DNA of 64,000 nucleotides from IMG/VR virus record IMGVR_UViG_3300028840_002431, positions 248,001-312,000 of that record; one strand, 5' to 3'. Below are positions 3,524 through 32,985 of this stretch, in pieces. Each line of letters opens with the position of its first letter. Positions within the stretch are counted from its first letter, which is position 1. The notes under the pieces were generated by a model. That model searched no databases. It saw only the letters and a list, made by a program, of their open reading frames with translations, and was not told the DNA's origin. The position numbers were made by a program, and so were the translations under genes.

Positions 3524-4738
3524 ATGACGAAAGCGACCGCACTGATGAAGTTTCTTTCCCAGGCCGCCAAACGGCTTGGGGTTGCCGACCACGTGTACAT
3601 CGTTGGAGGGGCGGTCAGAAACTACCTCATGGGTATCGCCCCCAAAGACGTGGACATGGTCATCGACTCCCTGGCTCTGGGCCGGGGAAGGGACTCTGAG
3701 TGGTTCGCAAAGAAGCTCCAAAGGGTAATCCCAGCCAGGACGAGCCTCACGACCAACCAGTACGGGGTAGCCATCCTGACGGTTGCCGACTCCTGGGAAC
3801 TGGGCGGCCACGACATGAAAGGGGAGGTGTTGGAAATCGCCAACGCCCGTAAGGAGTCGTATGGAGGCCCAGAGGGCAAAGGCTACAAACCCCACACAGT
3901 GGAACCGGCGACCATCGAAGAGGACCTCCTGAGGCGGGAGTTCACATTCAACACCCTGTTGTGGCGGCTTCTGGATCTCGAACACGGTGCCGAGAGAGCC
4001 GAAGTCATCGACCTCCTTGGCCGGGGACGCAAGGATCTGGAAGAACGACTGCTAACCACGCCTGTCGATCCGGACAAGACGTTCTCCGACGACCCTACCC
4101 GGATGCTCAGGGCCATCAAGTTCGTGGCCAAGTATGGGTTCAAGATCCCACCGGACGTGAAGGCAAGCATCCAGAGGAACGCCGGGAAGCTTTTGCGGAT
4201 GCCATGGGACGCCGTTCGTAAGATTCTGATTGAGGATATCCTCGAAGGCCCGGCTCCCCGTAAAAGCGTGAAGCTGTTACACGACCTTGGGTTGGGAGAG
4301 GTTCTCAAGGACATGCTCCAAAAGGAATCCGGTTTCGCGGCGGCGTTAACCCGGAGCCTGAGCGAGAAGGAAATCCATCTGGTCCTGGATCTTCTCGACC
4401 TGGGTTGGACCATGAAGACGCCGGTATCCTTCTTGGACGCGAAAGGGTTGAGACGCCTCCGAGAAATCCTACTGTCGAATGCGAACGACCCGGCCTTCGA
4501 GAAACGGTTCCTGGCCTCCTTGAAGAAGCCTCCCATTGATCAGGTACGCCTCTTCGAGACCTATCAGTTGAAAGGCCAGGATCGAGGTGAGGTCGCACAG
4601 TTAGCCCGTGCCGCTCTCTTGGAAGAACCGGAGCTTGCTGAGAAGCCGTCAGAGTTGGAGCGGCATGTTGAAGAGGCGGTCGAGAAGAGATTCAAACGTA
4701 CGGCACGGATCGTGAAGAGATACCTCAGGAGTCTGTAG
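3524..4738 (+). CDS. Class II tRNA nucleotidyltransferase (CCA-adding/poly(A) polymerase family), no HD domain
   Basis: YIVGGAVRN, KDVD, EDLLRREFTFN, FSDDPTRMLRAIKF; RBS GAGGA. Confidence 0.9.
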   Translation: MTKATALMKFLSQAAKRLGVADHVYIVGGAVRNYLMGIAPKDVDMVIDSLALGRGRDSEWFAKKLQRVIPARTSLTTNQYGVAILTVADSWELGGHDMKGEVLEIANARKESYGGPEGKGYKPHTVEPATIEEDLLRREFTFNTLLWRLLDLEHGAERAEVIDLLGRGRKDLEERLLTTPVDPDKTFSDDPTRMLRAIKFVAKYGFKIPPDVKASIQRNAGKLLRMPWDAVRKILIEDILEGPAPRKSVKLLHDLGLGEVLKDMLQKESGFAAALTRSLSEKEIHLVLDLLDLGWTMKTPVSFLDAKGLRRLREILLSNANDPAFEKRFLASLKKPPIDQVRLFETYQLKGQDRGEVAQLARAALLEEPELAEKPSELERHVEEAVEKRFKRTARIVKRYLRSL

Positions 4739-5237
4739 CCTCAGGTAGACGCTTTCTGACAAGGCACAACATCCGCCCCAGTTTGTTCTGGCCCGAACCA
4801 TCTTTCCCAGTACCCCAGTAATAGTCGTAAGGGGAAGCCTCCACGAGAAGTTGGTCGCCAGTAGAACGGAGAGCCGCAGTAAGGTCGTGACGTTGCGTGA
4901 ATTTTGCCACGAGCGCTGCGAACATGTAGTGGTCCTTGACCAACTCCACAACGACGCCTTGATCGTCACGGAATATATCGTGGAGATGCTTTGTGCCCAC
5001 AGAGGTTTCCCAGTCCTGTCTCATCTGACAAGCCCTTCCGAGTTTCTTTGCCAGTCCTGGTCCACCCGCGTCGGCAATACGTTGACGTTCTTCCGGCGTC
5101 GCAGCCTTACTGGCTTGGAAGAAGTGCTCGACAGTGATCCATTGCCGGTCTTCTATCTCGAACACAGCCTCGTAGAAGTTGGAAAGGAATCCGTGTGGAC
5201 CCTTAGGGCTGAAAAATTCTATCGTCATGTCTTCCAA
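4725..5237 (-). CDS. NADAR (YbiA-like) family ADP-ribose/N-glycosidase
   Basis: GFLSNFY, TVEHFFQASK, AKFTQ, LVEASPYDYYWG, GQNKLGRML. Confidence 0.9.
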   Translation of the reverse strand: MEDMTIEFFSPKGPHGFLSNFYEAVFEIEDRQWITVEHFFQASKAATPEERQRIADAGGPGLAKKLGRACQMRQDWETSVGTKHLHDIFRDDQGVVVELVKDHYMFAALVAKFTQRHDLTAALRSTGDQLLVEASPYDYYWGTGKDGSGQNKLGRMLCLVRKRLPEATDS

Positions 5238-5779
5238 TCCGAGACGAAGGGAGCCGGGTCGGCCGTAAGCTCTCGCAACGTCTCTAGGTATTTGGGTAGC
5301 ACCTTATCGAACAGAGCCACAGCATATGGCCCTCTTCGTTTTTTAACAGGAACCCGGAGTGTTATGATGCCCTTCTCCGGATCGGCCGGGAAAGTGAAGG
5401 TCGCCCCCAGGTTCTCAGTCTTCAACAGCTTTATGATCTGGTCCTCGTCCGGCGTCCCGGCTGGCCAGCCCTCGTCCTTGTAGGGCCACACTCTGCCGTC
5501 CCAGCCGAAGTCCTGGAGCAGTGAGCAGACGTGACGCTCCGTCTTCGGGTTGAAGGGAAGGCTCATGAGCAAGCCGCCGACAGATTTGGCCATCGTCTTG
5601 CTGAGCAACGCCAAACGAAGTATGACGACCGGCCAATGTTTCTTCCGGCTCGCCGTCCATCCTAACACAACAAAAGCCGGGTAAATTCCAGGACGTACGG
5701 CACCTTCCACCACGACGGCGGTGGGCACGTCTTTCCGCCCCCAAGCTTTTATATAGTCCTGTGTTCGCTGGTCTTTCAC
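5225..5779 (-). CDS. Hypothetical protein
   Basis: 184-aa ORF overlapping the NADAR start on the same strand. Confidence 0.55.
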   Translation of the reverse strand: MKDQRTQDYIKAWGRKDVPTAVVVEGAVRPGIYPAFVVLGWTASRKKHWPVVILRLALLSKTMAKSVGGLLMSLPFNPKTERHVCSLLQDFGWDGRVWPYKDEGWPAGTPDEDQIIKLLKTENLGATFTFPADPEKGIITLRVPVKKRRGPYAVALFDKVLPKYLETLRELTADPAPFVSDWKT

Positions 5780-6649: not shown

Positions 6650-6850
6650 TCAGAGCCTGGGTGTGAGCAGAGCCGTCACCCACACCAAAGCGGTCCCAAT
6701 AGCCGCAGCCGCTTGCGACGGTTGTCCGTGTCGAGAGAGCGCCCAAACCAACACGGTTGTCCCCGCCATGAAGTGTATACCCAAGCCGCCCATTAGGATC
6801 ATAACGAGTTCCTTCTTCGCAGCGGCTATCTTTGCCTTTGTTTCGCTCAT
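6650..6850 (-). CDS. Small two-TM membrane protein
   Basis: Two hydrophobic stretches; ATGA overlap with the upstream ORF. Confidence 0.5.
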   Translation of the reverse strand: MSETKAKIAAAKKELVMILMGGLGIHFMAGTTVLVWALSRHGQPSQAAAAIGTALVWVTALLTPRL

Positions 6851-7185
6851 TTCACATCCTTGACACAATCGAAGAAGTTGAGGGAGGGCTTCACGGGTTT
6901 GGTTGGTTTCCGTCCGCGTCGTAAAACCATACCGTCTTCGAACGGGACGGTTTCCTCTCTGTAGACCACGTACCAGTTCCGTTTTTTCTGGTAAACGTGA
7001 AAGCCGAGTCCGAACTGCTCGCTCGTTTCGTTCATACGCTTTTTCGTCGTGGTTGTCTTATGCCCACCGGAATCCAAGACTATACGCTTGTAGTTGAAAC
7101 CAACGACTCTCGTTCCATGGTAAATGACGTTTGTTGAGTTCTCGTCCGTGTAAACCTGAGTCCCGGTTTTTCCTATGGTCATCAC
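6847..7185 (-). CDS. Hypothetical phage protein
   Basis: Coupled to the kinase stop; GHKTTTTKKRMN motif; ends SLNFFDCVKDVK. Confidence 0.6.
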   Translation of the reverse strand: MMTIGKTGTQVYTDENSTNVIYHGTRVVGFNYKRIVLDSGGHKTTTTKKRMNETSEQFGLGFHVYQKKRNWYVVYREETVPFEDGMVLRRGRKPTKPVKPSLNFFDCVKDVK

Positions 7186-8093
7186 ACCGCTCGCTCAGGC
7201 ATCGGGAACGGTCGGTACTTGCGTTTGCCTATGGCTCGTTTGAGCACGCCATCGAACTCCTCGTGGGCGTCCCATGCGTCCTGTGGGCGTTTGGAGGGTA
7301 CCGACCAGAGACAGGTCTTTAAGAAATCTCGAACGAGCTTGGGGACAGAGTCCGACATCTGGTTGGTCGAGACATTACCCCCAACCAGCGCAACGGCACA
7401 TTTGGCAGCCATGTAGATGTCTGTAGCAGCGGTGGGGGTCTCCTTGGCCAGAATCTCCGGAGCGTAGAAATCCTTGTAAGGAGCGCTGATCGCTTTCACG
7501 TGCGGGTTCGAGAGAAAGGTGTCATCCGTCAGGTAGTCGTATAACGTCGGACCCTTCTTGGCTTTCGCCTTCTTGGGTGTGATGTCCACGGCATAGGACC
7601 AGTCGATGATCTTGGCCCCGTGGTCGGTTGGATGGATCAGCACGTGGGGCGGTATCAGAGCACCATGCACAATGCGATTCGTGTGAGCGAACCCTATGCC
7701 ATGCAGGATACGGTTGAACATCCACACCATATCCCGGAAGTCGATCCCATCTGGAAAAGCCTCCAACACTTCCGCGAGCGAGCGGTGCTCATTGAACCAA
7801 GGCAGGATGTTGACTCGCCGTTGGGACGGGACCAGGAACGAATCTAACACCCGTGGGAGAAAACGGTAAAACTTCTCGTCCTTGGCCGTCGGCGGGTACA
7901 ACCTTCCCAGGATCTTGGCTTCGTTCTCAACAAGATCATTGTCTGCGCTTTGTTTGACCACTTTGAAAACTACCGGGTACTCGTTGGTCCCGTTGAACAC
8001 TACGCAGTTATAAACGTCGCAGATGTCTCCCGACGCGAGTTTGTCAGTGAGGACGTACTTCTTGTTCTTGTGTTCGATCGCTATCGGTTCCAT
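7182..8093 (-). CDS. Ser/Thr protein kinase-like protein (atypical catalytic loop)
   Basis: LASGDICDVY, VFKV, NEAKIL, IVHGALIPPHVLI, IIDWS, YAPE, TDIYMAA. Confidence 0.8.
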   Translation of the reverse strand: MEPIAIEHKNKKYVLTDKLASGDICDVYNCVVFNGTNEYPVVFKVVKQSADNDLVENEAKILGRLYPPTAKDEKFYRFLPRVLDSFLVPSQRRVNILPWFNEHRSLAEVLEAFPDGIDFRDMVWMFNRILHGIGFAHTNRIVHGALIPPHVLIHPTDHGAKIIDWSYAVDITPKKAKAKKGPTLYDYLTDDTFLSNPHVKAISAPYKDFYAPEILAKETPTAATDIYMAAKCAVALVGGNVSTNQMSDSVPKLVRDFLKTCLWSVPSKRPQDAWDAHEEFDGVLKRAIGKRKYRPFPMPERAV

Positions 8094-9444
8094 GTCTTTC
8101 TTCTTCCCGAGGCCACGGGGTCTTGTCTTCGTATGTGGGTCCGGTTGAGCACAGTGTTACAGGTGTCTTGAGTTCTTGCGCTATATCGTCCAGGAAAGCG
8201 CTTCTGTCAAAAAGCTTCACGACCGGGATTGCGTTTTCGATCTTACGAGTTAACTCTTCTTGCTTGTCGAGATTGGGTTCTAGCCCTCGAAGGCAGCCGT
8301 AGAGATCCAGACGCTGTTGGACCGGCAGTTTGGTAATAGAGACGCCTTTTTCTAACACATAACCTACACACACTGACGGCCGGTCCGTTACTCTCAATTT
8401 ATCGAGGTTGGTGATCACCAATTCATCTACACCACCGATAACTTCAAGGGCGTATCTGGCCAGGACCATGTCGAAGTGCCCCAGGCGGAAGCTCTGTTGC
8501 CACTCGCCGTATTTGTTGTGTGTATCCGTGGCGTACTCTGTACAATTTCCGGCCGCGTCCTTGTCATGGACCTCCGTTGGGAAGGGGCCAGCGCCGTGCC
8601 TTGTCATGTAGGCGCGTAGAATTCCCATCCTACGTACCGGCCCGTTGAAATCTCCGAGTAGTTCGTAGGCGTTGTTGAAGGTTATGTCGGAGCGCGTGAC
8701 GTAAGGGAAGAAACCGTAATCCTGGTCCAACAAGACCCCCTGCGCTCCCTCGAAGATAACGGTCGAATCCCGCGACAACCGGAATTCTAACCAGTTGCGA
8801 TCGACGATGTTAATCTTGCAGCCAAAGGCGTGATACCGCACCGCGTAGTAAGACAATGCCGCTTCATCCCGGAGCAAGAGCAGGTTGGGGTCCCCGGCAT
8901 CAATGTCACACCCCTCGAACTCCTTCAGTTTCAGGTTTCGCGAGAAACGCAACTTCTCGTGAACCTTATCCCGATTCGGGAGATCCCCGATCCTCAGTGC
9001 CATGTCAGGATGCTCCAAGGCGTCCTTGGCTGTTTCTCCGATACCCATTCCGCAAGATCCGTGACGCTTGTTTCGAATGGTCTCTCGTAACCGGTTGGCG
9101 GCCACCTGATAGACGTTCGTTACCAGGGCTTCGCCTTCGACGAACAAGACGTTGTAGGGAGAGTGGCCAAGGGCCACAAGAGCTTGGACCTCCTCCTCCA
9201 AGGCGAGCGGGTTGACCATCATGTATCGGCTCAAGAGAGTGTCCGCCCCGGCCAGCGTCCCGCTACCAAACTGTGCAAACGTGTGGTGAGTTCCGTTGGG
9301 GAGAACGACGTTGTGAGCGGCTTGAGCACCTCCACAGTATCTGACTACCAGTTTGGAATGGTAGAGGCGGGTCAGGTAATCGACGATGGAGCCTTTGCCC
9401 TCATCCCCGAAACCCAACCCGGCTATGAGGATCACCTTTGCCAC
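8044..9444 (-). CDS. Adenylosuccinate synthetase-like protein (divergent PurA family)
   Basis: GLGFGDEGKG, GGAQAAH, GSCGMGIG, FEGAQGVLLD..FPYVTRS, AYMTRHGAGPFPTE; GTG start overlaps the NAMPT stop (TAGTG). Confidence 0.88.
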   Translation of the reverse strand: MAKVILIAGLGFGDEGKGSIVDYLTRLYHSKLVVRYCGGAQAAHNVVLPNGTHHTFAQFGSGTLAGADTLLSRYMMVNPLALEEEVQALVALGHSPYNVLFVEGEALVTNVYQVAANRLRETIRNKRHGSCGMGIGETAKDALEHPDMALRIGDLPNRDKVHEKLRFSRNLKLKEFEGCDIDAGDPNLLLLRDEAALSYYAVRYHAFGCKINIVDRNWLEFRLSRDSTVIFEGAQGVLLDQDYGFFPYVTRSDITFNNAYELLGDFNGPVRRMGILRAYMTRHGAGPFPTEVHDKDAAGNCTEYATDTHNKYGEWQQSFRLGHFDMVLARYALEVIGGVDELVITNLDKLRVTDRPSVCVGYVLEKGVSITKLPVQQRLDLYGCLRGLEPNLDKQEELTRKIENAIPVVKLFDRSAFLDDIAQELKTPVTLCSTGPTYEDKTPWPREEERHGTDSDRTQEQEVRPH

Positions 9445-10844
9445 TACAACTCCGCCCGCTCCCTGATGTGGGCCAGCGACTGATCCCACAGAAGCTCACC
9501 GTCCCGGAAGACCTCTGTCAGTTGTGGGACGCCCGCTGTTATGAAATTCCCTCGTTCGGGTACCGTGTGCCATGCCCCGTCTTGCTCGCGGATGACCAGG
9601 AAACGGCCCCGCTTGCTCTTCTTGGCCGACGACGTGACAGGGTCTTTGTACACGTCCCGCTCGTAGTCCTTACCCTTGGCCCACGAGCATTTGAAGGCGA
9701 ACTGTAGGGTATCCCTGTTGAACTTCTGTAACAGGCCGCCGCCGCTACCGAAAGCGATGTTGTCGATCGACCACCCCGAGTTGAGCAAGGCCCTGACTAT
9801 CGTCCCCAACATCTCCCTGTCGATACCATCTCCCTGGATGACGCGGACTTGCGGGGGAAGGACCTTGTACCCTTTCTCGTTCTTCTCCACACCAAAAGCG
9901 TCTCCCAGACCCTTGAGGACCTGGAGCACGGTGATGGGAAGCTCTCCCGAGTCAGGACGGACTACGAGCGTACCGTCACGGCTCAGGATCTGGTCTTTCA
10001 GTTCCTGACCCCAGTACACTTCGACGGCCCTCATGATGTCGAAACTGTCGCTCACACAGGCCACCAGACCCGTGGGGTACTGGTTCAACATGTTCCTGAA
10101 AGCGTCGAGTTCGTGCTCTTTGCCCCATGCTGTGATGGTCGAGTGCTCCGAGGCCGGGATGCTAACACCCGGCATCTCACAGCCGTAGAAGTCCATCAAC
10201 ATGTTACAGGCGATGAACGTGTCGGTGCCCTGGAAGTTGACCAAGTGGGCCGCCCCTCCAAGGGCCGCTTGCTCTGGGCACGAGACCCCACGGAAGCCGA
10301 AATCGTGGAGCTTGAATGGCAGCCCAGCAAGGTCTCCGCTCTTCTCCAGAGCGTCGTGGAGGATTTCCTTACACCCTCTCGAATTGGTGGCGATCGTGCT
10401 GGCGTACCAGACCTCAACGAGTATGGTTTCCAGCCAGTTGGTCAGCCAGTAGCACTCCGGGTCGGTGTTCTCGATCGTCATCAACGGCGTGCTCGTAGGA
10501 ACGACCGATCCTTCCGGCACTGCCTGTATGGAGACGGGCAGCTTGCCGCCGTGTTTGTCGATAATGTGCTGCCAACCGGCGACATTGAAGAGCTTGTCGT
10601 TGCCGAAGTGGGCCGCCCAACGCTTCGCAGACTTGTCAAGCCCCTCCTGCGTTACAACGACACCAGCGAGGTATTGTTTCAAGAAGTATTGCAGCCCGAA
10701 GAACACGACATAATCGCTCCACGACAGAGGTTTGCCGCGTGACTCGAAGTACGAGTAGACGTTCGTCGTGTCAGGTGGGTATTGAAGCCAGTGGGTTCCC
10801 TTGTAGCTGTCGGTTGCCCGTGTGATATCAAGTATTGGTTGCAT
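9444..10844 (-). CDS. nadV: Nicotinamide phosphoribosyltransferase (NAMPT)
   Basis: TDSYK..H..QYP, KLHDFGFRG, SIPASEHS, VSDSFD, VRPDSG, IQGDG, FGSGGGLLQ..RDT..FAFK. Confidence 0.95.
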   Translation of the reverse strand: MQPILDITRATDSYKGTHWLQYPPDTTNVYSYFESRGKPLSWSDYVVFFGLQYFLKQYLAGVVVTQEGLDKSAKRWAAHFGNDKLFNVAGWQHIIDKHGGKLPVSIQAVPEGSVVPTSTPLMTIENTDPECYWLTNWLETILVEVWYASTIATNSRGCKEILHDALEKSGDLAGLPFKLHDFGFRGVSCPEQAALGGAAHLVNFQGTDTFIACNMLMDFYGCEMPGVSIPASEHSTITAWGKEHELDAFRNMLNQYPTGLVACVSDSFDIMRAVEVYWGQELKDQILSRDGTLVVRPDSGELPITVLQVLKGLGDAFGVEKNEKGYKVLPPQVRVIQGDGIDREMLGTIVRALLNSGWSIDNIAFGSGGGLLQKFNRDTLQFAFKCSWAKGKDYERDVYKDPVTSSAKKSKRGRFLVIREQDGAWHTVPERGNFITAGVPQLTEVFRDGELLWDQSLAHIRERAEL

Positions 10845-11757
10845 GGCTTCTCCTTATTGCGCGGGTTGCGATATCCAACAGTTCGGAATGGCTGTCGGCG
10901 TAGTCGTATTGCTCTAACCGGTCGATATTGACCCAGAGACATTCGTCCAGATCGTCGTTGCCCTTGGCCGATCCGAAGACGTATTTGGCCAGATACAACG
11001 TGGTGAACATGGCGTAGCCAGGGGCGTCCCGCGCCACCACTCGAATCTGAGACAGGGGCGTGAAACCAGCGGCCTCGATACCGGTCTCTTCCAAAAGCTC
11101 ACGTTTGGCGGCGGCTTCTCCCCCGGCGTCGTCGGCATTGATATGGCCGCCTGGGAGCCTCAAGATACCGCCCTCCCGTTCACGCCTACCGAGTAGGACC
11201 TCAATCCCGCCGTCTTCCGTCGGCCGCCACACACAGATATCCACGACCGGGTCACAGCGGGCAAACTGGTTTGTCGCGCCGTAGATGACACCTCTACGAA
11301 AAGCCTCCGACACCTCCTGGCTACGTCCCGCTTCTAACCGCAGTTCGGTTGCCGACACATGCGGGATCTCTTCGATCTCCCGAACCTGGAAAGGGCCATG
11401 ATACCCGCTTTGAAGCGACTTCTTGGAGTTAGGACGGCCGCAGTAGATCACCACGTCATCCGTGGGGAACATGATGTTGATAAGTTGGTTGAGGTGTTTG
11501 GTCCAGCGCTCGTCTGTCGGTTGGTCGGGGAGCGGTACGACCACAGCACGCGGGTACTCCTCCTTGATCATCTGCTCACGCGCTTGGTAATCCAGGGGGT
11601 CTCGCGGCGTTCCGATAACCCGACTGACACCGACGCAGACCAGTAACTTGCTGTGGTTCCCGGCTGTGTTGAGCAACGCTCTGTGCCCCTCAGTCAACCT
11701 GTGGCACTGGAAACGTCCAATAACAACTCCGACGCTGGCTTTTCTCTTTTCGCTCAT
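10828..11757 (-). CDS. nadM: Bifunctional NMN adenylyltransferase / ADP-ribose pyrophosphatase (NadM-Nudix)
   Basis: IGRFQ...TEGH and SATELR in the N-terminal domain; Nudix box GGHINADDAGGEAAAKRELLEETG. Confidence 0.9.
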   Translation of the reverse strand: MSEKRKASVGVVIGRFQCHRLTEGHRALLNTAGNHSKLLVCVGVSRVIGTPRDPLDYQAREQMIKEEYPRAVVVPLPDQPTDERWTKHLNQLINIMFPTDDVVIYCGRPNSKKSLQSGYHGPFQVREIEEIPHVSATELRLEAGRSQEVSEAFRRGVIYGATNQFARCDPVVDICVWRPTEDGGIEVLLGRREREGGILRLPGGHINADDAGGEAAAKRELLEETGIEAAGFTPLSQIRVVARDAPGYAMFTTLYLAKYVFGSAKGNDDLDECLWVNIDRLEQYDYADSHSELLDIATRAIRRSHATNT

Positions 11758-11772
11758 GTTTCCTGGAGAGAT

Positions 11773-11798
11773 GGGGAGGGGGCCGGAACCCCCTCCCC
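11773..11798. other. GC-rich intergenic hairpin between the vWA gene and nadM
   Basis: GGGGAGGGGG-ccggaa-CCCCCTCCCC, 10-bp perfect stem with no U-tract on the coding strand (stabiliser or attenuator?). Confidence 0.6.
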
Positions 11799-11811
11799 TA
11801 TGGGTTAGGGT

Positions 11812-12792
11812 TTACAGTCGTACGTTTGTGCTCGCCTTATCTCCGTCCGGGACATCCCCGACGGTCGCGTCTCGAAGGGCTTCGCTGTTGGCCAGGGAGT
11901 TCAGGGCGGCCGTGACCACCTTGGCGTCCTTGCCGCCGCCGAGATCCGCCTCCACCTTGTCCAGGGTCAGCGCGTTCTCGAACATACCGACGCACGATCC
12001 GATGGCCTCACAGACCACTTCCGGGTCGTCCAGCATAAGGACGTGCTCTTCACCGACCAGTTCGGACCACGTCTCCTTCAGCCACGGCTCGCTGTAGTAG
12101 GAACTGCCGCCCGGAATGATGAAGAACAGGTTGTAACGCTCCTGGACCTCCTTGATGAGTTCCTTCGTCGTCACGTTCTGGTTCACCTTGTCCCCGAAGA
12201 TGTCCTTGATCTCCCGAGGGGTGGAACCCCCGTAAGGCCGCTCATCTCCGATCAGGAACAGGTAGCCCTTCTTGCCCCGCTTCTCCCAACAGTCGATGCT
12301 GGTCTTGCGGGCGAAGAAGTACAGGGCATTCTGGTAACTCTCTTCCCGGCTACCGCCACCCCCGCCTTCCAGGTACAGAAGGCCGAGTTGCTCGTCGATC
12401 TCGATTCCGGACTCGAACTGTCCGACTTGCAGTGGGACCCGGTCGGAGTTGTAGTCCCCAACACCGCCGACCATGATCTGAGGATCTTCGCAGTACTCCT
12501 TCTCCAGCAAAATCCCCATGAGCTTGGTCAGCTTCTCCTGTAACCGAGTCGGGACACTCCTCATGGAACCGGTGACATCGAACATGACTCCGATGGCTAC
12601 CGAGTTCGGATGAGCGTCCGAATCCCGAGACTCCCGGACCTCCACTCCCTTTGGGTCCAGCATGTCGTGGGCCTTGGCCGTCGTTCGCCCCCTTCTGATG
12701 TTGTCATCGTGGGCAAACGTCGGTGTGTTCGTCGCGGCCCGGTGACGGGCGCGGTCTCTGTACAGATCACTGCTCCAACTTGAACCACCCAT
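11812..12792 (-). CDS. vWA (MIDAS) domain protein
   Basis: MFDVTGSM MIDAS-like motif, GGGG..ESY, FLIGDE. Confidence 0.8.
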   Translation of the reverse strand: MGGSSWSSDLYRDRARHRAATNTPTFAHDDNIRRGRTTAKAHDMLDPKGVEVRESRDSDAHPNSVAIGVMFDVTGSMRSVPTRLQEKLTKLMGILLEKEYCEDPQIMVGGVGDYNSDRVPLQVGQFESGIEIDEQLGLLYLEGGGGGSREESYQNALYFFARKTSIDCWEKRGKKGYLFLIGDERPYGGSTPREIKDIFGDKVNQNVTTKELIKEVQERYNLFFIIPGGSSYYSEPWLKETWSELVGEEHVLMLDDPEVVCEAIGSCVGMFENALTLDKVEADLGGGKDAKVVTAALNSLANSEALRDATVGDVPDGDKASTNVRL

Positions 12793-12794
12793 TG

Positions 12795-13550
12795 TTATTG
12801 TTCCTTCCTTTTGTTCGTTGTTTGCATCTCGAAGTTGAATCCGTCGCGTACAGCCTTCTCGTAAGCCTTCTTGTTGAACCGGTAGAGTGTCGCGGGCGGA
12901 CCGGGGCGCTTACTGTTCCGGCGTTCCCCCGCCTTGACCAAGATACCCGTGGCCTGATTGAGTATCCGAATGCGTTTCCGGAAGTTGCCCCTGTCCAGAG
13001 GCCGAAAGAGAACGGCCTCGTACAGCCTTTGAAGCTGTGCCAGCGTGAAGCGCCTAGGCAACAGGTTGAAGCCGACGATGGGCGCGTACATAACCTTGCC
13101 TTGAAGACGGGTAACTGCTGTTTGAAGAATCTCGTGGTGGTCGAAGGCCCAGTCGGATGGAGGCAACGCCATGGCGTCCGCCACCGACATCCACAACGCC
13201 TCTGTGGCGTCCGTGCCGCACTTCGCTATGTGGTCCTGAGTGCGAACAAGGCCGTAGTAGGCGACCGACAGGACACGACCACGAGGGTCGCGGTCCGGAG
13301 CGTCGAACGTGTAAAGCTGTTCCAAGAAACCGACCGTGATGCCAGTCTCTTCTCGCAGCTTCCGTTCGGCCGCGTTTTCGGCTGTCTCGTCAGGGAGATT
13401 GATAAACCCACCGGGAAGCGCCCACTTTCCCTTGAATGGCTCCACGCCCCGACGGATCAACACGACCTCGATACGCCCTTCCGGGTGAAAACCAAAGAGG
13501 ACGCAGTCCACGGTTACATCGGCCTTCGGGTATTTGTACGTGTGTGCCAT
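12795..13550 (-). CDS. nrtR: NrtR-family ADP-ribose-responsive transcriptional regulator (Nudix + wHTH)
   Basis: TVDCVLF, WALPGGF, RDPRGRVLSVAY, AFDHHEI; C-terminal FTLAQLQRLYEAVL..DRGNFRKR..PATLYRF. Confidence 0.9.
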   Translation of the reverse strand: MAHTYKYPKADVTVDCVLFGFHPEGRIEVVLIRRGVEPFKGKWALPGGFINLPDETAENAAERKLREETGITVGFLEQLYTFDAPDRDPRGRVLSVAYYGLVRTQDHIAKCGTDATEALWMSVADAMALPPSDWAFDHHEILQTAVTRLQGKVMYAPIVGFNLLPRRFTLAQLQRLYEAVLFRPLDRGNFRKRIRILNQATGILVKAGERRNSKRPGPPATLYRFNKKAYEKAVRDGFNFEMQTTNKRKEQ

Positions 13551-13560
13551 ACCAGCCTTC

Positions 13561-13602
13561 GTGTACTATGGACACTGTGCCCTTTGGACACAAATATGTC
13601 AA
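13561..13602 (-). promoter_or_regulatory. Tandem NrtR-box-like operators overlapping a sigma70-type promoter
   Basis: GTGT-actatgg-ACAC (13561-13575) and GTGc-cctttgg-ACAC (13577-13591); TTGACA on the minus strand at 13597-13602. Confidence 0.7.
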
Positions 13603-13684
13603 TAAGAGAATGAAACAGATTCGCAACTTACCGGAACCATTAGAATAAATAGGGCCGAAAAGACACAAATAAGCCGATGAACCG

Positions 13685-13873
13685 TCAGCGCTTGGCCAGA
13701 TACTTTTCGTTCAAGGTCTCGACCCAGAGCTTCTGGTGCGGGTCCAAATCCCCACCCTCCGAGACGTTCTTGGCTAATTTCTCGAAGGCCGCACGCTCCG
13801 GTTTCGTCAGTTTCTTGGATTCGAGTAGAAGTCGAACCAGAGTCTTGTGGGGAAGGTTTCTTCTCTTCGGCAT
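13685..13873 (-). CDS. Small hypothetical protein
   Basis: ORF MPKRRNL...; start uncertain. Confidence 0.45.
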   Translation of the reverse strand: MPKRRNLPHKTLVRLLLESKKLTKPERAAFEKLAKNVSEGGDLDPHQKLWVETLNEKYLAKR

Positions 13874-13932: not shown

Positions 13933-14145
13933 CTATAGTTGATAATTTGATGGATCTATGCCCAACCAGTCCGCGAATAACCGATCGTCGTTCAAAACGA
14001 CGCGGCAAAAGTGATCCCTCTGCCGTTCATATTCGCTGCGGCACTCCTGGCTACAGCACATATCTCCATCAATACTAACAACCACCGCGCCCATGCTTTT
14101 GAGCGGGTCCTTACCACAGTTCTCGTTCAAGCATCTGGCCATCAT
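13933..14145 (-). CDS. Small Cys-rich protein
   Basis: CLNENC...CCSQEC; overlaps the upstream stop. Confidence 0.5.
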   Translation of the reverse strand: MMARCLNENCGKDPLKSMGAVVVSIDGDMCCSQECRSEYERQRDHFCRVVLNDDRLFADWLGIDPSNYQL

Positions 14146-14438
14146 TCAACCCTCGTGCAAACACCATAGATAGAGTTACGCCCTATCCAACCGTTAATGC
14201 GTCCTTTGTTGTTGCCGATCTGGAAGCGCTCTCCCTGGACTGCCTTCACCAGATGCAGGTACTGGCTCCCTCGAACCTTACAAAGGACGATGTCTCCGAC
14301 TTCGATTACTTTGGAGATCGGTTCGACCGTACACAACTGGCCGGACTCGATCTTCCCTTTCATGGAAGTACCGCGTGGGCGAAACCGAACCGTCTTACCA
14401 GCGTTGAGTTTCTCGATATGTTGAGTCGCCCAGCCCAC
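14142..14438 (-). CDS. S24/S26 peptidase-like protein
   Basis: GTSMKGKIESG...GDIVLCKV..YLHLVK...GNN. Confidence 0.65.
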   Translation of the reverse strand: MGWATQHIEKLNAGKTVRFRPRGTSMKGKIESGQLCTVEPISKVIEVGDIVLCKVRGSQYLHLVKAVQGERFQIGNNKGRINGWIGRNSIYGVCTRVE

Positions 14439-19311: not shown

Positions 19312-19780
19312 AATAGGCAAAAACGAGAAAGGGGAGCGGTACATCAAGTGCCTGACGTGCGGGATGGCGAGCTACCATCCGCAAGACATTGCGCACCTGT
19401 ACTGCGGGAAGTGTCATAAATTCCACTACGGCCCTAACGATCTCGACCCCGGCGATTATGCCCCGATTCACATGTGGTTCGGCTTGACCTACGCCAGTTG
19501 GTTGACCATACCCCGTGTCCTCATGGAAGCCATGCCGCTCCAATGGCAGAAGGATATGGTGCGTTTACTCAACGAGTTCAACGAGGAGTTCCCCCGCTGG
19601 TTGCCGGAAGACTTGTCCATCCATCTGTCCGGGAAACGACGCGGCAAGTATGCGTCCTTACCCAGAGAATTACACGAATACCGGCACCCGGACCGGCAAT
19701 GGTTAGCGCAGCAACACAGGAGTCATAACCATGACGAAATGCTCAATGAAACCGATAAAGATATACGCGGAAAACGCTGA
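19292..19780 (+). CDS. Zinc-ribbon-containing hypothetical protein
   Basis: CLTCG...YCGKCH followed by WFGLTYASWLTIPRVLM. Confidence 0.55.
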   Translation: MSDPTYEIGKNEKGERYIKCLTCGMASYHPQDIAHLYCGKCHKFHYGPNDLDPGDYAPIHMWFGLTYASWLTIPRVLMEAMPLQWQKDMVRLLNEFNEEFPRWLPEDLSIHLSGKRRGKYASLPRELHEYRHPDRQWLAQQHRSHNHDEMLNETDKDIRGKR

Positions 19781-20855
19781 CCCCAAAGCGCTGCACCAGT
19801 TCTATACAGCCATGGAACAGGACGCCGCCGTCCAGGGGGCGGTCATGCCCGACGTTCACGCGGGCTACTCATTACCCATCGGAGGGGTGGTGGCCACGGA
19901 GGGTGTAATATTTCCTTCGTGGGTCGGGTACGACATTGGGTGTGGAATGTGTGCTCAAGGCTTCTCTTTCGGAAGGGGAGCCGTCGAAGCCTACAGGCAA
20001 GAGATCTTCGAGAAGATCTATGAAGCCGTCCCGATCGGCCTTGGTAAATACCACGAGGGTCGGAAAAAGCTCACCTGGAAGAACGGTCCGCGCCCGATGC
20101 CCGAACACACGGAAGCCGTAAAAGAGATTCTCGCCAAGAAGAACGGCGAGTCACAGTTGGGCACTCTTGGGAGCGGGAACCACTTCATCGAGATAGGCTA
20201 CGACGAAGACGATATGATCTGGGTGATCGTCCACTCAGGGTCGAGAGGCGTTGGCCATGCGACGGCCACACACTACATGAAGCTGGCCGGGGGAGGAAAA
20301 GCCAGGGAAGGCCACTTCGGACTCAGGGTCGATAGCACAGAGGGCCATGCCTACCAGATTGACCTGAACTTCTGCCTGGAGTTCGCCCTGGAAAACCGAC
20401 GGCAAATGCTGACGACGATCTACACGGTGATGAAATCGTTCTGTGACGGAGAGCCGACGACAGAGCTTATCAACCGAAACCACAACCACGCCGAGAGTAA
20501 GGACGGCCGGTGGATTCACCGGAAAGGGGCCACCCACGCCGAAGAAGGAATGGCAGGAGTCATCCCCGGCAACATGAGGGACGGCTCCTTCATCGTGGAG
20601 GGGAAAGGCAACCCGGAGTCCCTGTGCTCCAGTTCCCACGGTGCCGGTCGTGTGAAGAGTCGGAGTCAAGCGAAGAAGACCATCGACTTCACGACGTTCA
20701 AGGAGGAGATGGAGGGCATCACCGCGAAAGTCGAGCCGTCAGTCATCGACGAGTCTCCGGGAGCCTACAAGGACATCTTTGAGGTCATGAGGCTACAGTC
20801 CGGACTCGTGGACGTGAAACACCACGTGAGACCGATCATCAACGTAAAGGCGTGA
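19731..20855 (+). CDS. rtcB: RtcB family RNA ligase
   Basis: PDVHAG, VGYDIGCG, GTLGSGNHFIE, HSGSRG, HNH, HRKGAT, HGAGR, DESPGAYK. Confidence 0.95.
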   Translation: MTKCSMKPIKIYAENADPKALHQFYTAMEQDAAVQGAVMPDVHAGYSLPIGGVVATEGVIFPSWVGYDIGCGMCAQGFSFGRGAVEAYRQEIFEKIYEAVPIGLGKYHEGRKKLTWKNGPRPMPEHTEAVKEILAKKNGESQLGTLGSGNHFIEIGYDEDDMIWVIVHSGSRGVGHATATHYMKLAGGGKAREGHFGLRVDSTEGHAYQIDLNFCLEFALENRRQMLTTIYTVMKSFCDGEPTTELINRNHNHAESKDGRWIHRKGATHAEEGMAGVIPGNMRDGSFIVEGKGNPESLCSSSHGAGRVKSRSQAKKTIDFTTFKEEMEGITAKVEPSVIDESPGAYKDIFEVMRLQSGLVDVKHHVRPIINVKA

Positions 20856-31832: not shown

Positions 31833-32985
31833 CGTCTTATTCGTCGGTGGGTGGTTCGACAAAAAGGGCGGCCATCCCTCAAGGATCGTCCGGAAGTTGG
31901 CCTACGGCCTGTACGAAACCATCAACGGCGGGACTATCCAGGACCTGGAAGAGGTGCTCGATACCGTCCACCGGTATGACGCTGTCGTGTGGATGCCCCA
32001 CATATCCAACTCCGAGACAAAACTTCTTCCCCGGATCAAAGAAAACGCGCCTCGCATCGTCCTCATTAGCTCCAAGCGTAACGACCGCAGAAAGTACGAG
32101 TTCGAACACGTTATCGACCGGGCGTTGAAATCCAAGTCTCAACTGCTTATCGAGATCAGGGACTCGCCGCTATCCAACACGGCCAGATGTTACGATCTGA
32201 GGCTCGTAGACCCGCTGGGCAACGTGTCCGAATGGTTTACCACCGGCCGCATTAACGAACAGGGCGAGGAGGAGATCGCGGAGTTCCGTTGTCTCCTGTA
32301 CGAGCGAATCCAATTCCTGTTGAGAATGAAAAGAGTTAAGTCAGTCTGTAGCGCTCTCCAACCCCTTGAAAAGGCTCGTCTCGATCGGCGGTTCATGAAA
32401 GCGATTCAGAAGTACGCGGACAGATTCCACGAGTTAATCCACGGTGATAACGAGAACCCACGCTTCATGGGTAACGCCTCATTCCGATGCACGAAGGGCG
32501 GCTTCCCTTCCCAGCGGACGGAGCACGCCATCTACGTCAGTCGGCGCAATGTTGACAAGCGCTGCCTCGATTCAGACGGCTTCGTCGCCGTGGACAACAC
32601 CCTTGAACACTCCCGCATGATGCGCAGATCCCCCAGCCACCTGAGAAAAGAGATTAGTGAGCAGTCTGTCATGTACTGGGGTGAGAACAAGCCCTCCGTG
32701 GATACGCCGGTCCAGGTCGAGTTGTACCGGCTCTTCCCAAACATCAACTTCATGCTCCACGCTCACGTCTACCATAAGGACGGCGTGATGACGGCCCGGT
32801 ACGTGCCTTGTGGAGATCTCCGAGAGGTAGACGAAGTCGTGAACGCAATCGGAGACCCAGAGGCAAAACGCTTCATCGTGAACCTCAAAGGGCACGGTTG
32901 TATTCTGGCCAGCGAGAACGTGGAAGACCTTCTCGACCAGGAACCCAACTTCCGGGCCAGACCCACGGAAGAAAAGACGCTATGA
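31825..32985 (+). CDS. Protein with C-terminal class II aldolase/adducin-like domain
   Basis: GNASFR, KPSVDTPVQ, MLHAH, NLKGHG. Confidence 0.65.
   Translation: MPNVLFVGGWFDKKGGHPSRIVRKLAYGLYETINGGTIQDLEEVLDTVHRYDAVVWMPHISNSETKLLPRIKENAPRIVLISSKRNDRRKYEFEHVIDRALKSKSQLLIEIRDSPLSNTARCYDLRLVDPLGNVSEWFTTGRINEQGEEEIAEFRCLLYERIQFLLRMKRVKSVCSALQPLEKARLDRRFMKAIQKYADRFHELIHGDNENPRFMGNASFRCTKGGFPSQRTEHAIYVSRRNVDKRCLDSDGFVAVDNTLEHSRMMRRSPSHLRKEISEQSVMYWGENKPSVDTPVQVELYRLFPNINFMLHAHVYHKDGVMTARYVPCGDLREVDEVVNAIGDPEAKRFIVNLKGHGCILASENVEDLLDQEPNFRARPTEEKTL

What the first reader, a model, noticed from the sequence alone, without database searches (positions are those of the whole stretch)
7182..13602. ADP-ribose-sensing, self-regulated NAD+/purine rescue operon: nrtR-vWA-nadM/Nudix-NAMPT-AdSS-like-kinase
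Seen: six co-oriented, mostly overlapping or coupled genes behind one promoter with operator-like palindromes. The NrtR Nudix box reads RKLREETG rather than RELxEETG, which fits a non-catalytic sensor. Established: NAMPT plus NMNAT rebuild NAD+ from nicotinamide (the phage NARP2-type route). NrtR repressors release DNA when they bind ADP-ribose, and ADP-ribose is the product of NADase defences (SIR2, TIR, Thoeris, DSR). Inference: the phage detects host NAD+ destruction through ADP-ribose and induces the countermeasure on demand. This would be an inducible anti-defence circuit, extended with adenylate resynthesis and a vWA/kinase pair.
Basis: partly seen in the sequence, partly recalled or inferred. 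Interest (0 to 1): 0.78.

Follow-up and report, generated by a model that had tools for sequence, protein, structure and literature searches.

The report
Self-regulated phage NAD-rescue operon plus unknown trio
A 416-kb phage carries one tightly packed operon, guarded by its own NrtR-type nucleotide-sensing repressor, that joins a known NAD+-rebuilding enzyme pair to an uncharacterised three-gene module also found behind the same repressor family in hundreds of bacterial species.

Summary
Six co-oriented, coupled minus-strand genes (13550-7182) sit behind a TTGACA box and two adjacent 15-bp palindromes. That pair is the only tandem GTGT-N7-ACAC pair in the 416-kb genome. The gene string actually runs on to 6650.

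The locus is a composite.
- The NadM-like/Nudix gene plus NAMPT is the usual phage NARP2-type pair.
- The vWA protein, the AdSS-like protein and the "kinase" are one conserved trio. Forty of 80 sampled bacterial loci carry NrtR-kinase-vWA-AdSS-like in that order. The trio also occurs in cluster C mycobacteriophages and other large phages.

The AdSS-like protein is not PurA. It scores below PurA's curated cut-off, its aspartate loop is replaced, the phage has no PurB, and host-type genomes keep a true PurA elsewhere. The "kinase" lacks the catalytic Asp (HRD is HGA). "Adenylate resynthesis" is therefore unsupported.

An ADP-ribose-relieved, self-limiting circuit controlling NAD+ rebuilding is plausible. 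NrtR next to NAMPT recurs in several large phages and NARP2 is known to be costly. The ligand is untested. The trio's function is unknown, and I found no description of it.

The parts
13673..13689 (-). Terminator-like hairpin plus T-run that closes the upstream minus-strand gene and sets off the nrtR promoter region.
   Evidence: consensus scan; sequence.
13597..13602 (-). TTGACA, a -35-like hexamer. Seventeen nt downstream lies a weak -10 candidate, CACAGT (13579-13574).
   Evidence: Read. The scan did not call it because the -10 is too weak. The same TTGACA-then-operator layout occurs in relatives L003 and L004.
13576..13592 (-). Operator site A, TGTGTCCAAAGGGCACA (core GTGT-N7-gCAC). It lies in the spacer and -10 region.
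13561..13575 (-). Operator site B, GTGTCCATAGTACAC (exact GTGT-N7-ACAC). It lies over the expected transcription start, 16 nt from site A.
   Evidence: The GT-N7-AC family core is from PMC2330246.
12795..13550 (-). nrtR: an NrtR-family regulator of 251 aa, with a Nudix domain and an NrtR winged-helix domain. Its Nudix box reads RKLREETG.
11812..12792 (-). vWA-fold protein of 326 aa (PHROG 2971). It has a conserved roughly 60-aa N-terminal extension and a MIDAS-like DxTGS motif. First member of the trio.
11773..11798 (-). GC-rich intercistronic hairpin with an 11-bp stem (-27.9 kcal/mol) and no T-run. It is conserved with one compensatory pair change in L004, and other phage relatives have analogous hairpins after their vWA gene.
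10828..11757 (-). Divergent two-domain NadM-like nucleotidyltransferase plus Nudix hydrolase. It carries GRFQ...TEGH and SATELR motifs and an intact RELLEETG Nudix box.
9444..10844 (-). NAMPT (nicotinamide phosphoribosyltransferase), 466 aa.
   Evidence: NF006629 scores 577 bits (cut-off 405) and PHROG 448 scores 528 bits.
8044..9444 (-). AdSS-fold paralogue. The likely start is the GTG at 9444, overlapping the NAMPT stop as TAGTG; the open frame reaches 9489. The P-loop, Asp13, His41 and Gln224 equivalents are kept, but the aspartate loop is replaced. Second member of the trio.
7182..8093 (-). Kinase-fold protein of 303 aa. HRD is replaced by HGA, and the catalytic-loop Lys and Asn are absent. 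The beta3 Lys, alphaC Glu and DFG-type Asp are kept. Third member of the trio.
6847..7185 (-). Kyano_Gp96-like gene of 112 aa, coupled to the kinase gene by an ATGA overlap. It is not conserved alongside the module elsewhere.
6650..6850 (-). 66-aa ORF that looks hydrophobic by eye, coupled by an ATGA overlap. It is the last co-directional gene before a conserved opposite-strand gene.

Best explanation
The locus is a composite, negatively autoregulated operon in a roughly 416-kb phage (an IMG/VR virus record from sediment and seawater metagenomes).

Shown:
- An NrtR-family repressor gene heads the operon. Two adjacent GTGT-N7-ACAC palindromes overlap its own TTGACA-type promoter.
- Downstream lie two separable modules.
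- Module 1 is a NadM-like nucleotidyltransferase/Nudix protein plus NAMPT. This is the standard phage NARP2-type gene pair.
- Module 2 is a conserved trio: a vWA protein, an AdSS-fold paralogue and a kinase-fold protein without the catalytic Asp. In bacteria the trio forms a four-gene cassette with the same NrtR lineage.
- In this phage the NAD pair sits inside that cassette, just downstream of a conserved hairpin that follows the vWA gene.

Inferred:
- Host RNA polymerase transcribes the operon early.
- NrtR accumulates and shuts the promoter unless a Nudix-domain ligand keeps it off the DNA. The most likely ligand is ADP-ribose or a close relative, the product of NAD+-cleaving defences.
- NAMPT and the NMNAT domain then rebuild NAD+ from nicotinamide, and the Nudix domain recycles ADP-ribose.
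- The self-limiting loop spares the phage the PRPP cost reported for NARP2.

Inferred with low confidence:
- The AdSS-fold protein still phosphorylates a 6-oxopurine nucleotide using a nucleoside triphosphate, but couples it to an acceptor other than free aspartate.
- The vWA and kinase-fold proteins act as its regulatory or scaffolding partners.
- The trio's physiological role is tied to NAD/ADP-ribose stress, but I cannot name it.
For: Genes and domains.

Operators:
- They are the only tandem pair in the genome.
- The same GTGT-N7-ACAC tandem layout occurs in phage relatives L003, L004 and L007/8/11. It also occurs at -51/-28 before nrtR in Planctomycetota and Chloroflexota cassettes.
- In flanking DNA the exact motif occurs in only 0.2% of 230-nt windows.
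- The family core GT-N7-AC and release of DNA on ADPR binding were shown for two bacterial NrtRs (PMC2330246).

The trio as a unit:
- Every locus holding the vWA gene also holds the AdSS-like gene and usually the kinase gene.
- Of 80 bacterial loci, 40 read NrtR-kinase-vWA-AdSS on one strand and 47 hold NrtR.
- At least 575 pattern matches in species genomes encode a relative.
- It occurs in 219 phage records, mostly cluster C mycobacteriophages, e.g. Pinkcreek gp240-243.

Phylogeny: the phage NrtRs group together (support 90/93), next to trio-linked Planctomycetota NrtRs.

The NAD pair as a unit: 31 of 80 viral NAMPT loci have the NadM/Nudix gene adjacent.

Links between NAMPT and NrtR or the trio recur: L002, L003, L007/8/11, L010, L095, L132, L163, L165.

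NARP2 cost and toxicity.

The AdSS-like protein is a paralogue. Four genomes carrying the cassette also have a true PurA scoring 567-641 bits, while the second, low-scoring match reaches only 86-171 bits. In three of the four that second match lies inside the cassette locus.
Against: - No ligand, DNA-binding or expression data exist. No RNA runs hold this sequence.
- The best solved relative of the regulator is AraR, which senses arabinose rather than ADPR.
- The protein scores 147 bits against NCBI's ADPR-responsive NrtR equivalog, far below the 400 cut-off.
- The -10 element is weak, and huge phages may use their own transcription machinery.
- The NMNAT assignment is weak. The best full-length family score is 36 bits against a 409 cut-off, and the HxGH region carries a 2-residue insertion.
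- Only 3 of the 80 closest viral NAMPT loci carry NrtR, so regulation is the exception.
- In Actinomycetota the cassette's NrtR tree follows taxonomy. That fits a chromosomal stress or housekeeping role rather than a conflict system.
- The strong hairpin after the vWA gene could end most transcripts before the enzymes.
Confidence: 0.55

Rival explanations
1. All six genes form one NAD+/purine rescue pathway. NAMPT and NMNAT rebuild NAD+, the AdSS-like enzyme resynthesises adenylate from IMP, and an active protein kinase with its vWA partner tunes the pathway.
For: The protein has the Adenylsucc_synt fold at 224 bits, with the P-loop and the Asp13, His41 and Gln224 equivalents retained. The genes are co-transcribed with the NAD enzymes.
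Against: - It scores below PurA's curated cut-off, 199 against 402.
- The loop GATTGRRRRTGW, which binds aspartate in E. coli PurA (role from memory), is GEWQQSFRLGH here, and the replacement is conserved across 84 family members.
- Several IMP-phosphate contacts are also changed (N38Q, T129C, R143H by alignment; roles from memory).
- No adenylosuccinate lyase is found in the phage.
- Bacteria with the cassette already have a true PurA.
- The trio occurs without any NAMPT in 80 of 80 bacterial loci.
- The kinase lacks its catalytic Asp, Lys and Asn.
Confidence: 0.1
2. This is a homeostatic module, not a counter-defence. The phage simply raises and stabilises NAD+ for its own NAD-dependent enzymes. 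NrtR acts as ordinary feedback, as in the bacterial nrtR-nadV and nadM-nadV regulons. The trio is a bacterial stress module carried along with its regulator.
For: - Bacterial NrtR regulons with prs-nadV and nadM-nadV are classic metabolic regulation.
- KVP40-type NARP2 raises NAD+ even without a defence system.
- Phage G has an NrtR-like gene ahead of a full Preiss-Handler set: pncA-like, pncB, nadD, nadE.
- The cassette's NrtR tree follows taxonomy in Actinomycetota, and the Labilithrix locus has ordinary chromosomal neighbours.
Against: - NARP2 has been shown to defeat Thoeris and DSR2.
- The neighbourhood also holds a NADAR gene, conserved in relatives and found next to the cassette in Planctomycetota.
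- ADPR, the NrtR ligand, is precisely what NADase defences produce.
- The two readings are not exclusive.
Confidence: 0.25
3. The trio is itself a conflict system. It would be an ADPR-triggered defence or exclusion module in bacteria, reused by phages against competing phages or against host immunity. The AdSS-like enzyme would make a modified nucleotide or a nucleotide-protein adduct.
For: - It is a self-contained cassette under a ligand-sensing repressor.
- It is present in both bacteria and unrelated phage groups.
- The enzyme is catalytically competent-looking but has a changed acceptor site.
- Nudix-HTH regulators have been predicted to control systems that sense ADP-ribose in conflicts (PMC9503650).
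Against: - There are no PADLOC hits for the vWA or AdSS-like proteins, and only generic kinase hits.
- No defence-island context was seen in the one bacterial locus with gene calls.
- Inheritance looks vertical in Actinomycetota.
Confidence: 0.1
4. The AdSS-like gene is PurZ, and the phage replaces adenine by 2-aminoadenine.
For: It matches PHROG 1211, whose label names a PurZ-type enzyme.
Against: - The PurZ model scores 50 bits against a 300 cut-off.
- The solved PurZ matches at E = 4.6e-4, against 1e-36 for PurA.
- The same family sits in hundreds of bacterial chromosomes.
Confidence: 0.02

Closest known systems
Bacterial NrtR regulons (Shewanella nrtR-prs-nadV; Synechocystis nadM-nadV), Rodionov et al. 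2008
   Same: It has a Nudix plus winged-helix regulator, palindromic operators with a GT-N7-AC core (sometimes in tandem), and nicotinamide-salvage genes (nadV/NAMPT, nadM) as targets. In the studied cases ADPR releases the repressor from DNA.
   Different: Here the regulator is encoded by a phage. It is only 147 bits against the curated equivalog (cut-off 400). It belongs to the lineage that in bacteria controls the kinase-vWA-AdSS-like trio rather than NAD genes. Its ligand is untested.
NARP2 (Vibrio phage KVP40 Nampt plus Nmnat/Nudix), Osterman et al. 2024
   Same: A NAMPT gene lies adjacent to a two-domain nucleotidyltransferase/Nudix gene, in the same order as in 28 of 80 related viral loci. 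The expected chemistry is nicotinamide to NMN to NAD+.
   Different: The NMNAT domain is very divergent. The pair is embedded in a larger operon with its own repressor and with three unrelated genes. No regulator is mentioned in the NARP2 passages I read; a brief mention elsewhere in that preprint was not ruled out. NARP2's constitutive cost is reported there.
Adenylosuccinate synthetase PurA and its phage derivative PurZ
   Same: It shares the fold, the GDxGKG P-loop, the catalytic Asp and His, and the Gln224 equivalent.
   Different: The aspartate loop and several nucleotide-phosphate contacts are replaced in a family-wide pattern. It scores below both curated cut-offs. It is always paired with a vWA protein and usually a kinase-fold protein. 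It coexists with a true PurA in bacteria.
Bacillus phage G gp273 cluster
   Same: A full-length NrtR-like gene in a huge phage stands at the head of co-oriented NAD-salvage genes.
   Different: The cargo is the Preiss-Handler route (isochorismatase/PncA-like, PncB, NadD, NadE), not NAMPT/NMNAT. There is no trio. Identity to the window's NrtR is 33%.
vWA-kinase partnerships such as the TerY-P triad (recalled from the literature, not tested here)
   Same: A vWA protein is genetically coupled to a kinase-fold protein in a small cassette.
   Different: There is no PP2C phosphatase. The kinase lacks its catalytic Asp. The third partner is an AdSS-fold enzyme. The vWA protein matches no Pfam VWA or TerY model.

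Membership tests
NrtR family of Nudix-related transcriptional regulators | N-terminal Nudix-fold domain | tested here: met
   PF00293 at 70.4 bits (cut-off 21.1).
NrtR family of Nudix-related transcriptional regulators | C-terminal NrtR-type winged-helix DNA-binding domain | tested here: met
   PF21906 at 66.8 bits (cut-off 27). It aligns end to end with solved AraR and Shewanella NrtR.
NrtR family of Nudix-related transcriptional regulators | Palindromic operator with a GT-N7-AC core at regulated promoters | tested here: met
   Two adjacent sites at 13561-13592. They are the only tandem pair in the genome, and the layout is conserved in relatives.
NrtR family of Nudix-related transcriptional regulators | Score above NCBI's equivalog cut-off for the ADPR-responsive repressor | tested here: not met
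   NF050029 at 147.4 bits against a cut-off of 400. It is a family member but not the curated equivalog.
NrtR family of Nudix-related transcriptional regulators | ADP-ribose binding that releases the DNA | not testable with these tools
   This needs EMSA or ITC. The structure paper with the ligand contacts was not available. The nearest solved relative senses arabinose.
NARP2 (phage Nampt plus Nmnat) | Nicotinamide phosphoribosyltransferase | tested here: met
   NF006629 at 577.5 bits (cut-off 405), NAMPT_N plus NAPRTase domains, PHROG 448 at 528 bits.
NARP2 (phage Nampt plus Nmnat) | NMN adenylyltransferase encoded with it | tested here: inconclusive
   The two-domain order matches NadM-Nudix, and the GRFQ...TEGH and SATELR motifs are present. 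Scores are far below the cut-offs (36 against 409) and Pfam finds no CTP_transf_like hit.
NARP2 (phage Nampt plus Nmnat) | Restores NAD+ and overcomes NAD+-depleting defences | not testable with these tools
   This is a functional assay, as.
Adenylosuccinate synthetase (PurA) | Fold, P-loop and the catalytic Asp13, His41 and Gln224 | tested here: met
   PF00709 at 224.5 bits. Alignment to E. coli PurA (1ade) is.
Adenylosuccinate synthetase (PurA) | Curated equivalog score | tested here: not met
   NF002223 at 198.8 against 402, and TIGR00184 at 179 against 395.6. True PurA genes in cassette-bearing genomes score 567-641.
Adenylosuccinate synthetase (PurA) | Aspartate-binding loop (Thr300, Thr301, Arg303, Arg305 region) | tested here: not met
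   GATTGRRRRTGW is replaced by GEWQQSFRLGH. The family consensus is G.WQG.FR.GHFD. The residue roles are from memory of the E. coli structures.
PurZ (2-aminoadenine pathway) | Curated PurZ model score | tested here: not met
   NF038379 at 50.3 bits against 300. PDB PurZ matches at E = 4.6e-4.
Hanks-type Ser/Thr protein kinases | Catalytic loop HRDxKxxN with the Asp base | tested here: not met
   The loop reads HGALIPPH. Asp is Ala in 70 of 74 relatives and is never Asp.
Hanks-type Ser/Thr protein kinases | Kinase fold with the beta3 Lys, alphaC Glu and DFG Asp | tested here: met
   Pkinase at 38.2 bits (cut-off 31.7). Lys44 is kept in 72 of 74, Glu58 in 74 of 74 and Asp164 in 63 of 74.
von Willebrand factor A (vWA) domain | vWA fold with a MIDAS motif | tested here: met
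   Asp72, Thr74, Gly75 and Ser76 are invariant (DxTGS). Atlas structural matches to PF00092 clusters reach TM 0.57-0.60 over residues about 60-310. No Pfam model matches.

The most novel reading that the evidence does not exclude
The NrtR-kinase-fold-vWA-AdSS-like cassette may be a new kind of ADP-ribose-responsive system. In this reading the AdSS-fold enzyme activates a 6-oxopurine nucleotide and joins it to an acceptor other than free aspartate, possibly a protein amine or another metabolite. The vWA and Asp-less kinase-fold proteins would control it; in many bacteria the kinase-fold protein carries a J-like domain. Large phages would have captured the cassette and fused it with NARP2, giving a two-armed, self-regulated answer to NAD+-cleaving immunity.
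Probability: 0.2. Interest if true: 0.85.

Novelty: new variant of a known kind. Interest (0 to 1): 0.7.

Why it matters
NAD+ depletion is a common bacterial defence against phages, and phage NAD+ reconstitution pathways have been described only recently. No regulator is mentioned in the NARP2 passages I read, and NARP2 is reported there to be costly and even toxic. A phage-borne sensor of the NAD+ breakdown product would be a natural answer to that cost. It would also be an example of a virus reading the state of host immunity through a metabolite.

Separately, this window exposes a compact cassette present in hundreds of bacterial species and more than 200 sequenced phages. I found no description of it in the library searched. 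Its enzyme looks active, but on substrates other than PurA's. Tractable carriers exist, namely cluster C mycobacteriophages and Streptomyces and its relatives, so the question can be addressed directly at the bench.

Tried and rejected
- Megablast of the locus against the phage collection gave no match.
- PADLOC gave nothing for the vWA or AdSS-like proteins.
- A profile of the vWA family against PDB sequences gave no meaningful hit.
- Literature searches for the trio found nothing relevant. They covered adenylosuccinate with vWA, kinase and phage; PurA-like; AdSS-like; and von Willebrand with adenylosuccinate and Nudix. The Vi01 paper lists unrelated genes.
No models were made, so fold evidence rests on the Atlas.
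- No RNA sequencing runs hold the locus, only three metagenome DNA runs.
- The NrtR structure paper with the ADPR contacts was not held.
- My naive ORF clustering of the bacterial flanks was spoiled by long antisense ORFs in high-GC DNA. It was replaced by tblastn with the window's proteins.
- I searched the genome for further NrtR sites. The seven other exact single sites lie within ORFs of at least 90 aa found by a mechanical scan (one at an ORF start), with about six expected by chance, so I did not count them as regulon members.
- The PurZ reading was considered and rejected.

Full report
**Setting.** The window is bases 248,001-312,000 of a single 416,539-bp contig. That contig is held as an IMG/VR virus record, linear, with a CheckV completeness estimate of 87%. 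The same DNA is found in sediment and seawater metagenome runs; no RNA run holds it. The window also carries phage-type replication genes, including a DNA polymerase, a DnaB-like helicase and RtcB. The locus therefore lies in the nucleotide-metabolism and replication part of a huge phage. Megablast finds no close relative among deposited phages.

**Checking the observation.**
- Pfam, PHROGs and NCBIfam give an NrtR-type regulator (NUDIX plus NrtR_WHD).
- Next is a 326-aa protein without a Pfam hit (PHROG 2971).
- Next is a protein with an N-terminal nucleotidyltransferase-like region and a C-terminal Nudix domain.
- Next is a clear NAMPT.
- Next is an adenylosuccinate-synthetase-fold protein.
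- Last is a kinase-fold protein.

The junctions are tight. There is a 2-nt gap, then 54 nt, then a 17-nt overlap. The NAMPT stop shares a base with a GTG that gives the AdSS-like protein a PurA-like N-terminus (TAGTG at 9444). The last junction is a 50-nt overlap.

The string does not stop at 7182. A Kyano_Gp96-like gene and a 66-aa ORF follow, each with an ATGA overlap, down to 6650. After that comes a gene on the other strand that is conserved in relatives.

**The promoter region.** Upstream of nrtR there is a terminator-like hairpin for the preceding gene. Then come TTGACA, then TGTGTCCAAAGGGCACA, then GTGTCCATAGTACAC, then a GAAGG ribosome-binding site and the ATG. The consensus promoter scan does not call this site, because the -10 candidate is weak.

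The two palindromes are not chance.
- They are the only 1-mismatch matches to GTGTCC-N3-GGACAC in the whole genome; shuffled genomes give about 20 two-mismatch matches, as does the real one.
- They form the only tandem pair of GTGT-N7-ACAC-type sites in the genome.
- The other seven exact single sites lie within ORFs of at least 90 aa found by a mechanical scan, one of them at an ORF start.

So the predicted regulon is this operon alone.

**The regulator.** It aligns over its whole length with solved NrtR-family proteins. The best match is Bacteroides AraR (E = 3e-43), followed by Shewanella NrtR. It scores far below NCBI's equivalog cut-off.

Rodionov et al. described 21-bp palindromes with a GT-N7-AC core, tandem sites in Shewanella, and loss of DNA binding with ADPR (PMC2330246). 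Site B here fits GTGT-N7-ACAC exactly, and site A fits with one mismatch.

The same motif, again in tandem and next to a TTGACA box, precedes nrtR in phage relatives L003, L004 and L007/8/11. It also sits at -51 and -28 before nrtR in Planctomycetota cassettes, and singly in two Chloroflexota cassettes. In the flanking DNA of those loci the exact motif occurs in only 0.2% of 230-nt windows. Actinomycetota cassettes use a different tandem palindrome, TTCTC-N5-GAGAA (33 of 46 loci).

However, 45 of 56 relatives have Glu at that position and only this phage has Lys. The family as a whole keeps a complete Nudix box. One substitution is thin evidence for a non-catalytic sensor.

**The NAD pair.** NAMPT is unambiguous (577 bits against a 405 cut-off).

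The neighbouring protein has the domain order of NadM-Nudix enzymes. It carries GRFQ...TEGH and SATELR motifs and a full RELLEETG Nudix box. It is very divergent: Pfam gives no cytidylyltransferase hit, and it scores 24 bits against the Synechocystis NadM-Nudix structure.

Among the 80 viral loci with the most similar NAMPT, 31 have this kind of gene adjacent, 28 of them in the same order as here. This is the arrangement named NARP2. Osterman et al. showed that the KVP40 pair defeats Thoeris and DSR2. They also found that it overproduces NAD+ even without a defence system, consumes PRPP, and could not be cloned in E. coli. No regulator is mentioned in the NARP2 passages I read.

The 326-aa protein has thousands of relatives at 50-75% identity. 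It has an invariant DxTGS motif and structural matches to vWA clusters, so the vWA call is right.

Its nearest homologue sits in a contig (L004) that reads NrtR, vWA, AdSS-like, kinase, with no NAMPT in the 16 kb fetched. A homologue in the Labilithrix luteola chromosome reads kinase, vWA, AdSS-like.

I used tblastn with the window's proteins on all fetched loci.
- Every locus with the vWA gene also has the AdSS-like gene, and nearly always the kinase gene.
- Of 80 bacterial loci, 40 read NrtR-kinase-vWA-AdSS on one strand, 18 more read kinase-vWA-AdSS, and 47 hold NrtR. The loci come from Actinomycetota, Planctomycetota, Chloroflexota and Myxococcota, chosen from at least 575 hits.
- None of the 80 holds NAMPT.

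The trio also occurs in 219 deposited phage genomes, 201 of them mycobacteriophages. In Pinkcreek the genes are annotated serine/threonine kinase, hypothetical protein and PurA-like adenylosuccinate synthetase. It occurs in Rhizobium and Vibrio phages too.

In a tree of the regulators, the phage NrtRs group together (support 90/93). They sit next to the trio-linked NrtRs of Planctomycetota, which share their operator. The Actinomycetota clade follows taxonomy.

The simplest reading is that NrtR plus trio is the older unit, and that phages added the NAD pair to it. Here the pair was inserted between the vWA and AdSS-like genes. This is an inference from gene orders and an unrooted tree.

**What the trio proteins look like.**

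*The AdSS-like protein.* It keeps the GDxGKG P-loop and the equivalents of Asp13, His41 and Gln224 of E. coli PurA. So the first half-reaction, phosphorylation of a 6-oxopurine, is plausibly retained.

The loop that reads GATTGRRRRTGW in E. coli reads GEWQQSFRLGH here. Across 84 members it reads G.WQG.FR.GHFD. In PurA this loop holds aspartate; that role comes from my memory of the E. coli structures, not from a tool.

By the same alignment, residues I recall as contacting the IMP phosphate are changed in a conserved way: N38Q, T129C and R143H. TKLD becomes TNLD or THLD.

The protein scores half of PurA's curated cut-off and one sixth of PurZ's. The phage has no Lyase_1/PurB gene. Four cassette-bearing bacterial genomes each have a true PurA at 567-641 bits elsewhere, and a second match at only 86-171 bits. 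In three of the four that second match lies inside the cassette locus. The protein is therefore a paralogue with its own function.

*The kinase-fold protein.* It keeps the beta3 Lys, the alphaC Glu and a DFG-type Asp. Its catalytic loop reads HGALIPPH where kinases have HRDxKxxN. Asp is Ala in 70 of 74 relatives and is never Asp. It is either a pseudokinase or an atypical enzyme.

In 45 of 73 relatives, though not in this window, a YRxL...HPD motif precedes the kinase core. It matches the DnaJ model weakly (28.5 bits in one case; count). That hints at chaperone recruitment.

I found no description of this trio or four-gene cassette in the library.

**How it most likely works.**

Shown: the anatomy, the operators and the conservation.

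Inferred: the regulator represses its own operon by sitting on the spacer/-10 region and the start site. A Nudix-domain ligand, most likely ADPR, relieves the repression.

No repressor exists when the phage genome enters the cell. The operon should therefore fire first and then be shut down, unless the ligand is present. This is a self-limiting loop that stays open when NAD+ is being cleaved. That design would answer the cost reported for unregulated NARP2.

The recurring linkage of NAMPT with NrtR and with the trio in several distinct large phages argues that the trio's job is connected with NAD/ADP-ribose stress. NrtR lies next to NAMPT in L002, L003, L095 and L163. NAMPT lies next to vWA and AdSS-like in L132 and L165. 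All three occur together in L007/8/11, L010 and this window. I cannot say what the trio's job is.

A conserved hairpin follows the vWA gene. It has an 11-bp stem (-27.9 kcal/mol), is unique in the genome, and shows one compensatory pair change in L004. Analogous hairpins occur in L006, L007 and L010. It may attenuate or stabilise the transcript and so set different levels for the regulator/vWA part and the enzymes. This is untested.

**Limits.**
- There are no expression, binding or enzymatic data.
- No structure models could be made.
- The ligand is uncertain, since AraR is the nearest solved relative.
- The NMNAT assignment is weak.
- Regulation by NrtR is the exception among NARP2-type loci (3 of 80).
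- The cassette's apparently vertical inheritance in Actinomycetota fits a stress or housekeeping role as well as a conflict role.

**Verdict.** The locus is a new variant of known kinds, namely the NrtR regulon and NARP2. It contains a widespread module that I found nowhere described, and that is the more interesting result.

Noticed in passing
window 4725-5237 (-), with a partner gene at 5225-5779 (-): A NADAR-domain gene (97 bits) lies 1.4 kb beyond the operon's end, preceded by a conserved 184-aa gene. Both are syntenic in L004 and L010. A NADAR gene (144 bits) also sits directly upstream of nrtR in a Pirellulales cassette (L086), and tblastn finds relatives in L092, L062 and L009 as well. 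This is a second ADP-ribose-related link to the cassette.
   Followed up: partly
window 11773-11798 (-); L004 8995-9022: A GC-rich hairpin lies immediately after the vWA stop codon. It is conserved between the window and L004, with the same loop and one compensatory pair change. L006, L007, L010 and some bacterial loci have different but equally strong hairpins at the same position. Its role (attenuator, processing site or stabiliser) is unknown.
   Followed up: partly
bacterial loci L005 and L024, and 45 of 73 kinase-fold relatives: Many relatives of the kinase-fold protein carry an N-terminal YRxL...HPD motif. It matches the DnaJ (J-domain) model weakly, just reaching the Pfam cut-off in L024. 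The window's copy lacks it.
   Followed up: partly
L001 (Bacillus phage G, gp273-gp283): A full-length NrtR-like gene in phage G heads a co-oriented set annotated isochorismatase hydrolase, nicotinate phosphoribosyltransferase, nicotinate-nucleotide adenylyltransferase and NAD synthetase. That is a whole Preiss-Handler route, with a KptA-like RNA 2'-phosphotransferase among the genes.
   Followed up: no
L013 (Mycobacterium phage Pinkcreek gp241): In a subset of cluster C mycobacteriophages the vWA homologue is 607 aa and matches in two pieces. This suggests an insertion of about 280 aa, possibly an intein.
   Followed up: no
window 3524-4738 (+): A PolyA_pol/CCA-adding-type nucleotidyltransferase converges on the NADAR gene. 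It is 72% identical and syntenic in L004. RtcB (19731-20855) and another nucleotidyltransferase (32808-34088) lie nearby, which suggests an RNA-repair theme in this part of the genome.
   Followed up: no
window 14142-14438 (-): A 98-aa ORF upstream of the operon has a weak Peptidase_S24-like match (21.9 bits, just under the cut-off). That is the LexA/CI-type self-cleaving fold.
   Followed up: no
genome 212271-215259 (outside the window): Two adjacent paralogous ORFs of 510 and 484 aa each contain a GTGTAyTTCTkACAC palindrome at the same relative place. I read this as sequence paralogy, not as NrtR sites.
   Followed up: partly
L014 (Rhizobium phage RHph_TM30, gp011-gp019): In this 208-kb phage the vWA and AdSS-like pair lies a few genes after a phosphoribosyltransferase-like gene and a cytidyltransferase. 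This may be another NAD-related pairing with the module.
   Followed up: no
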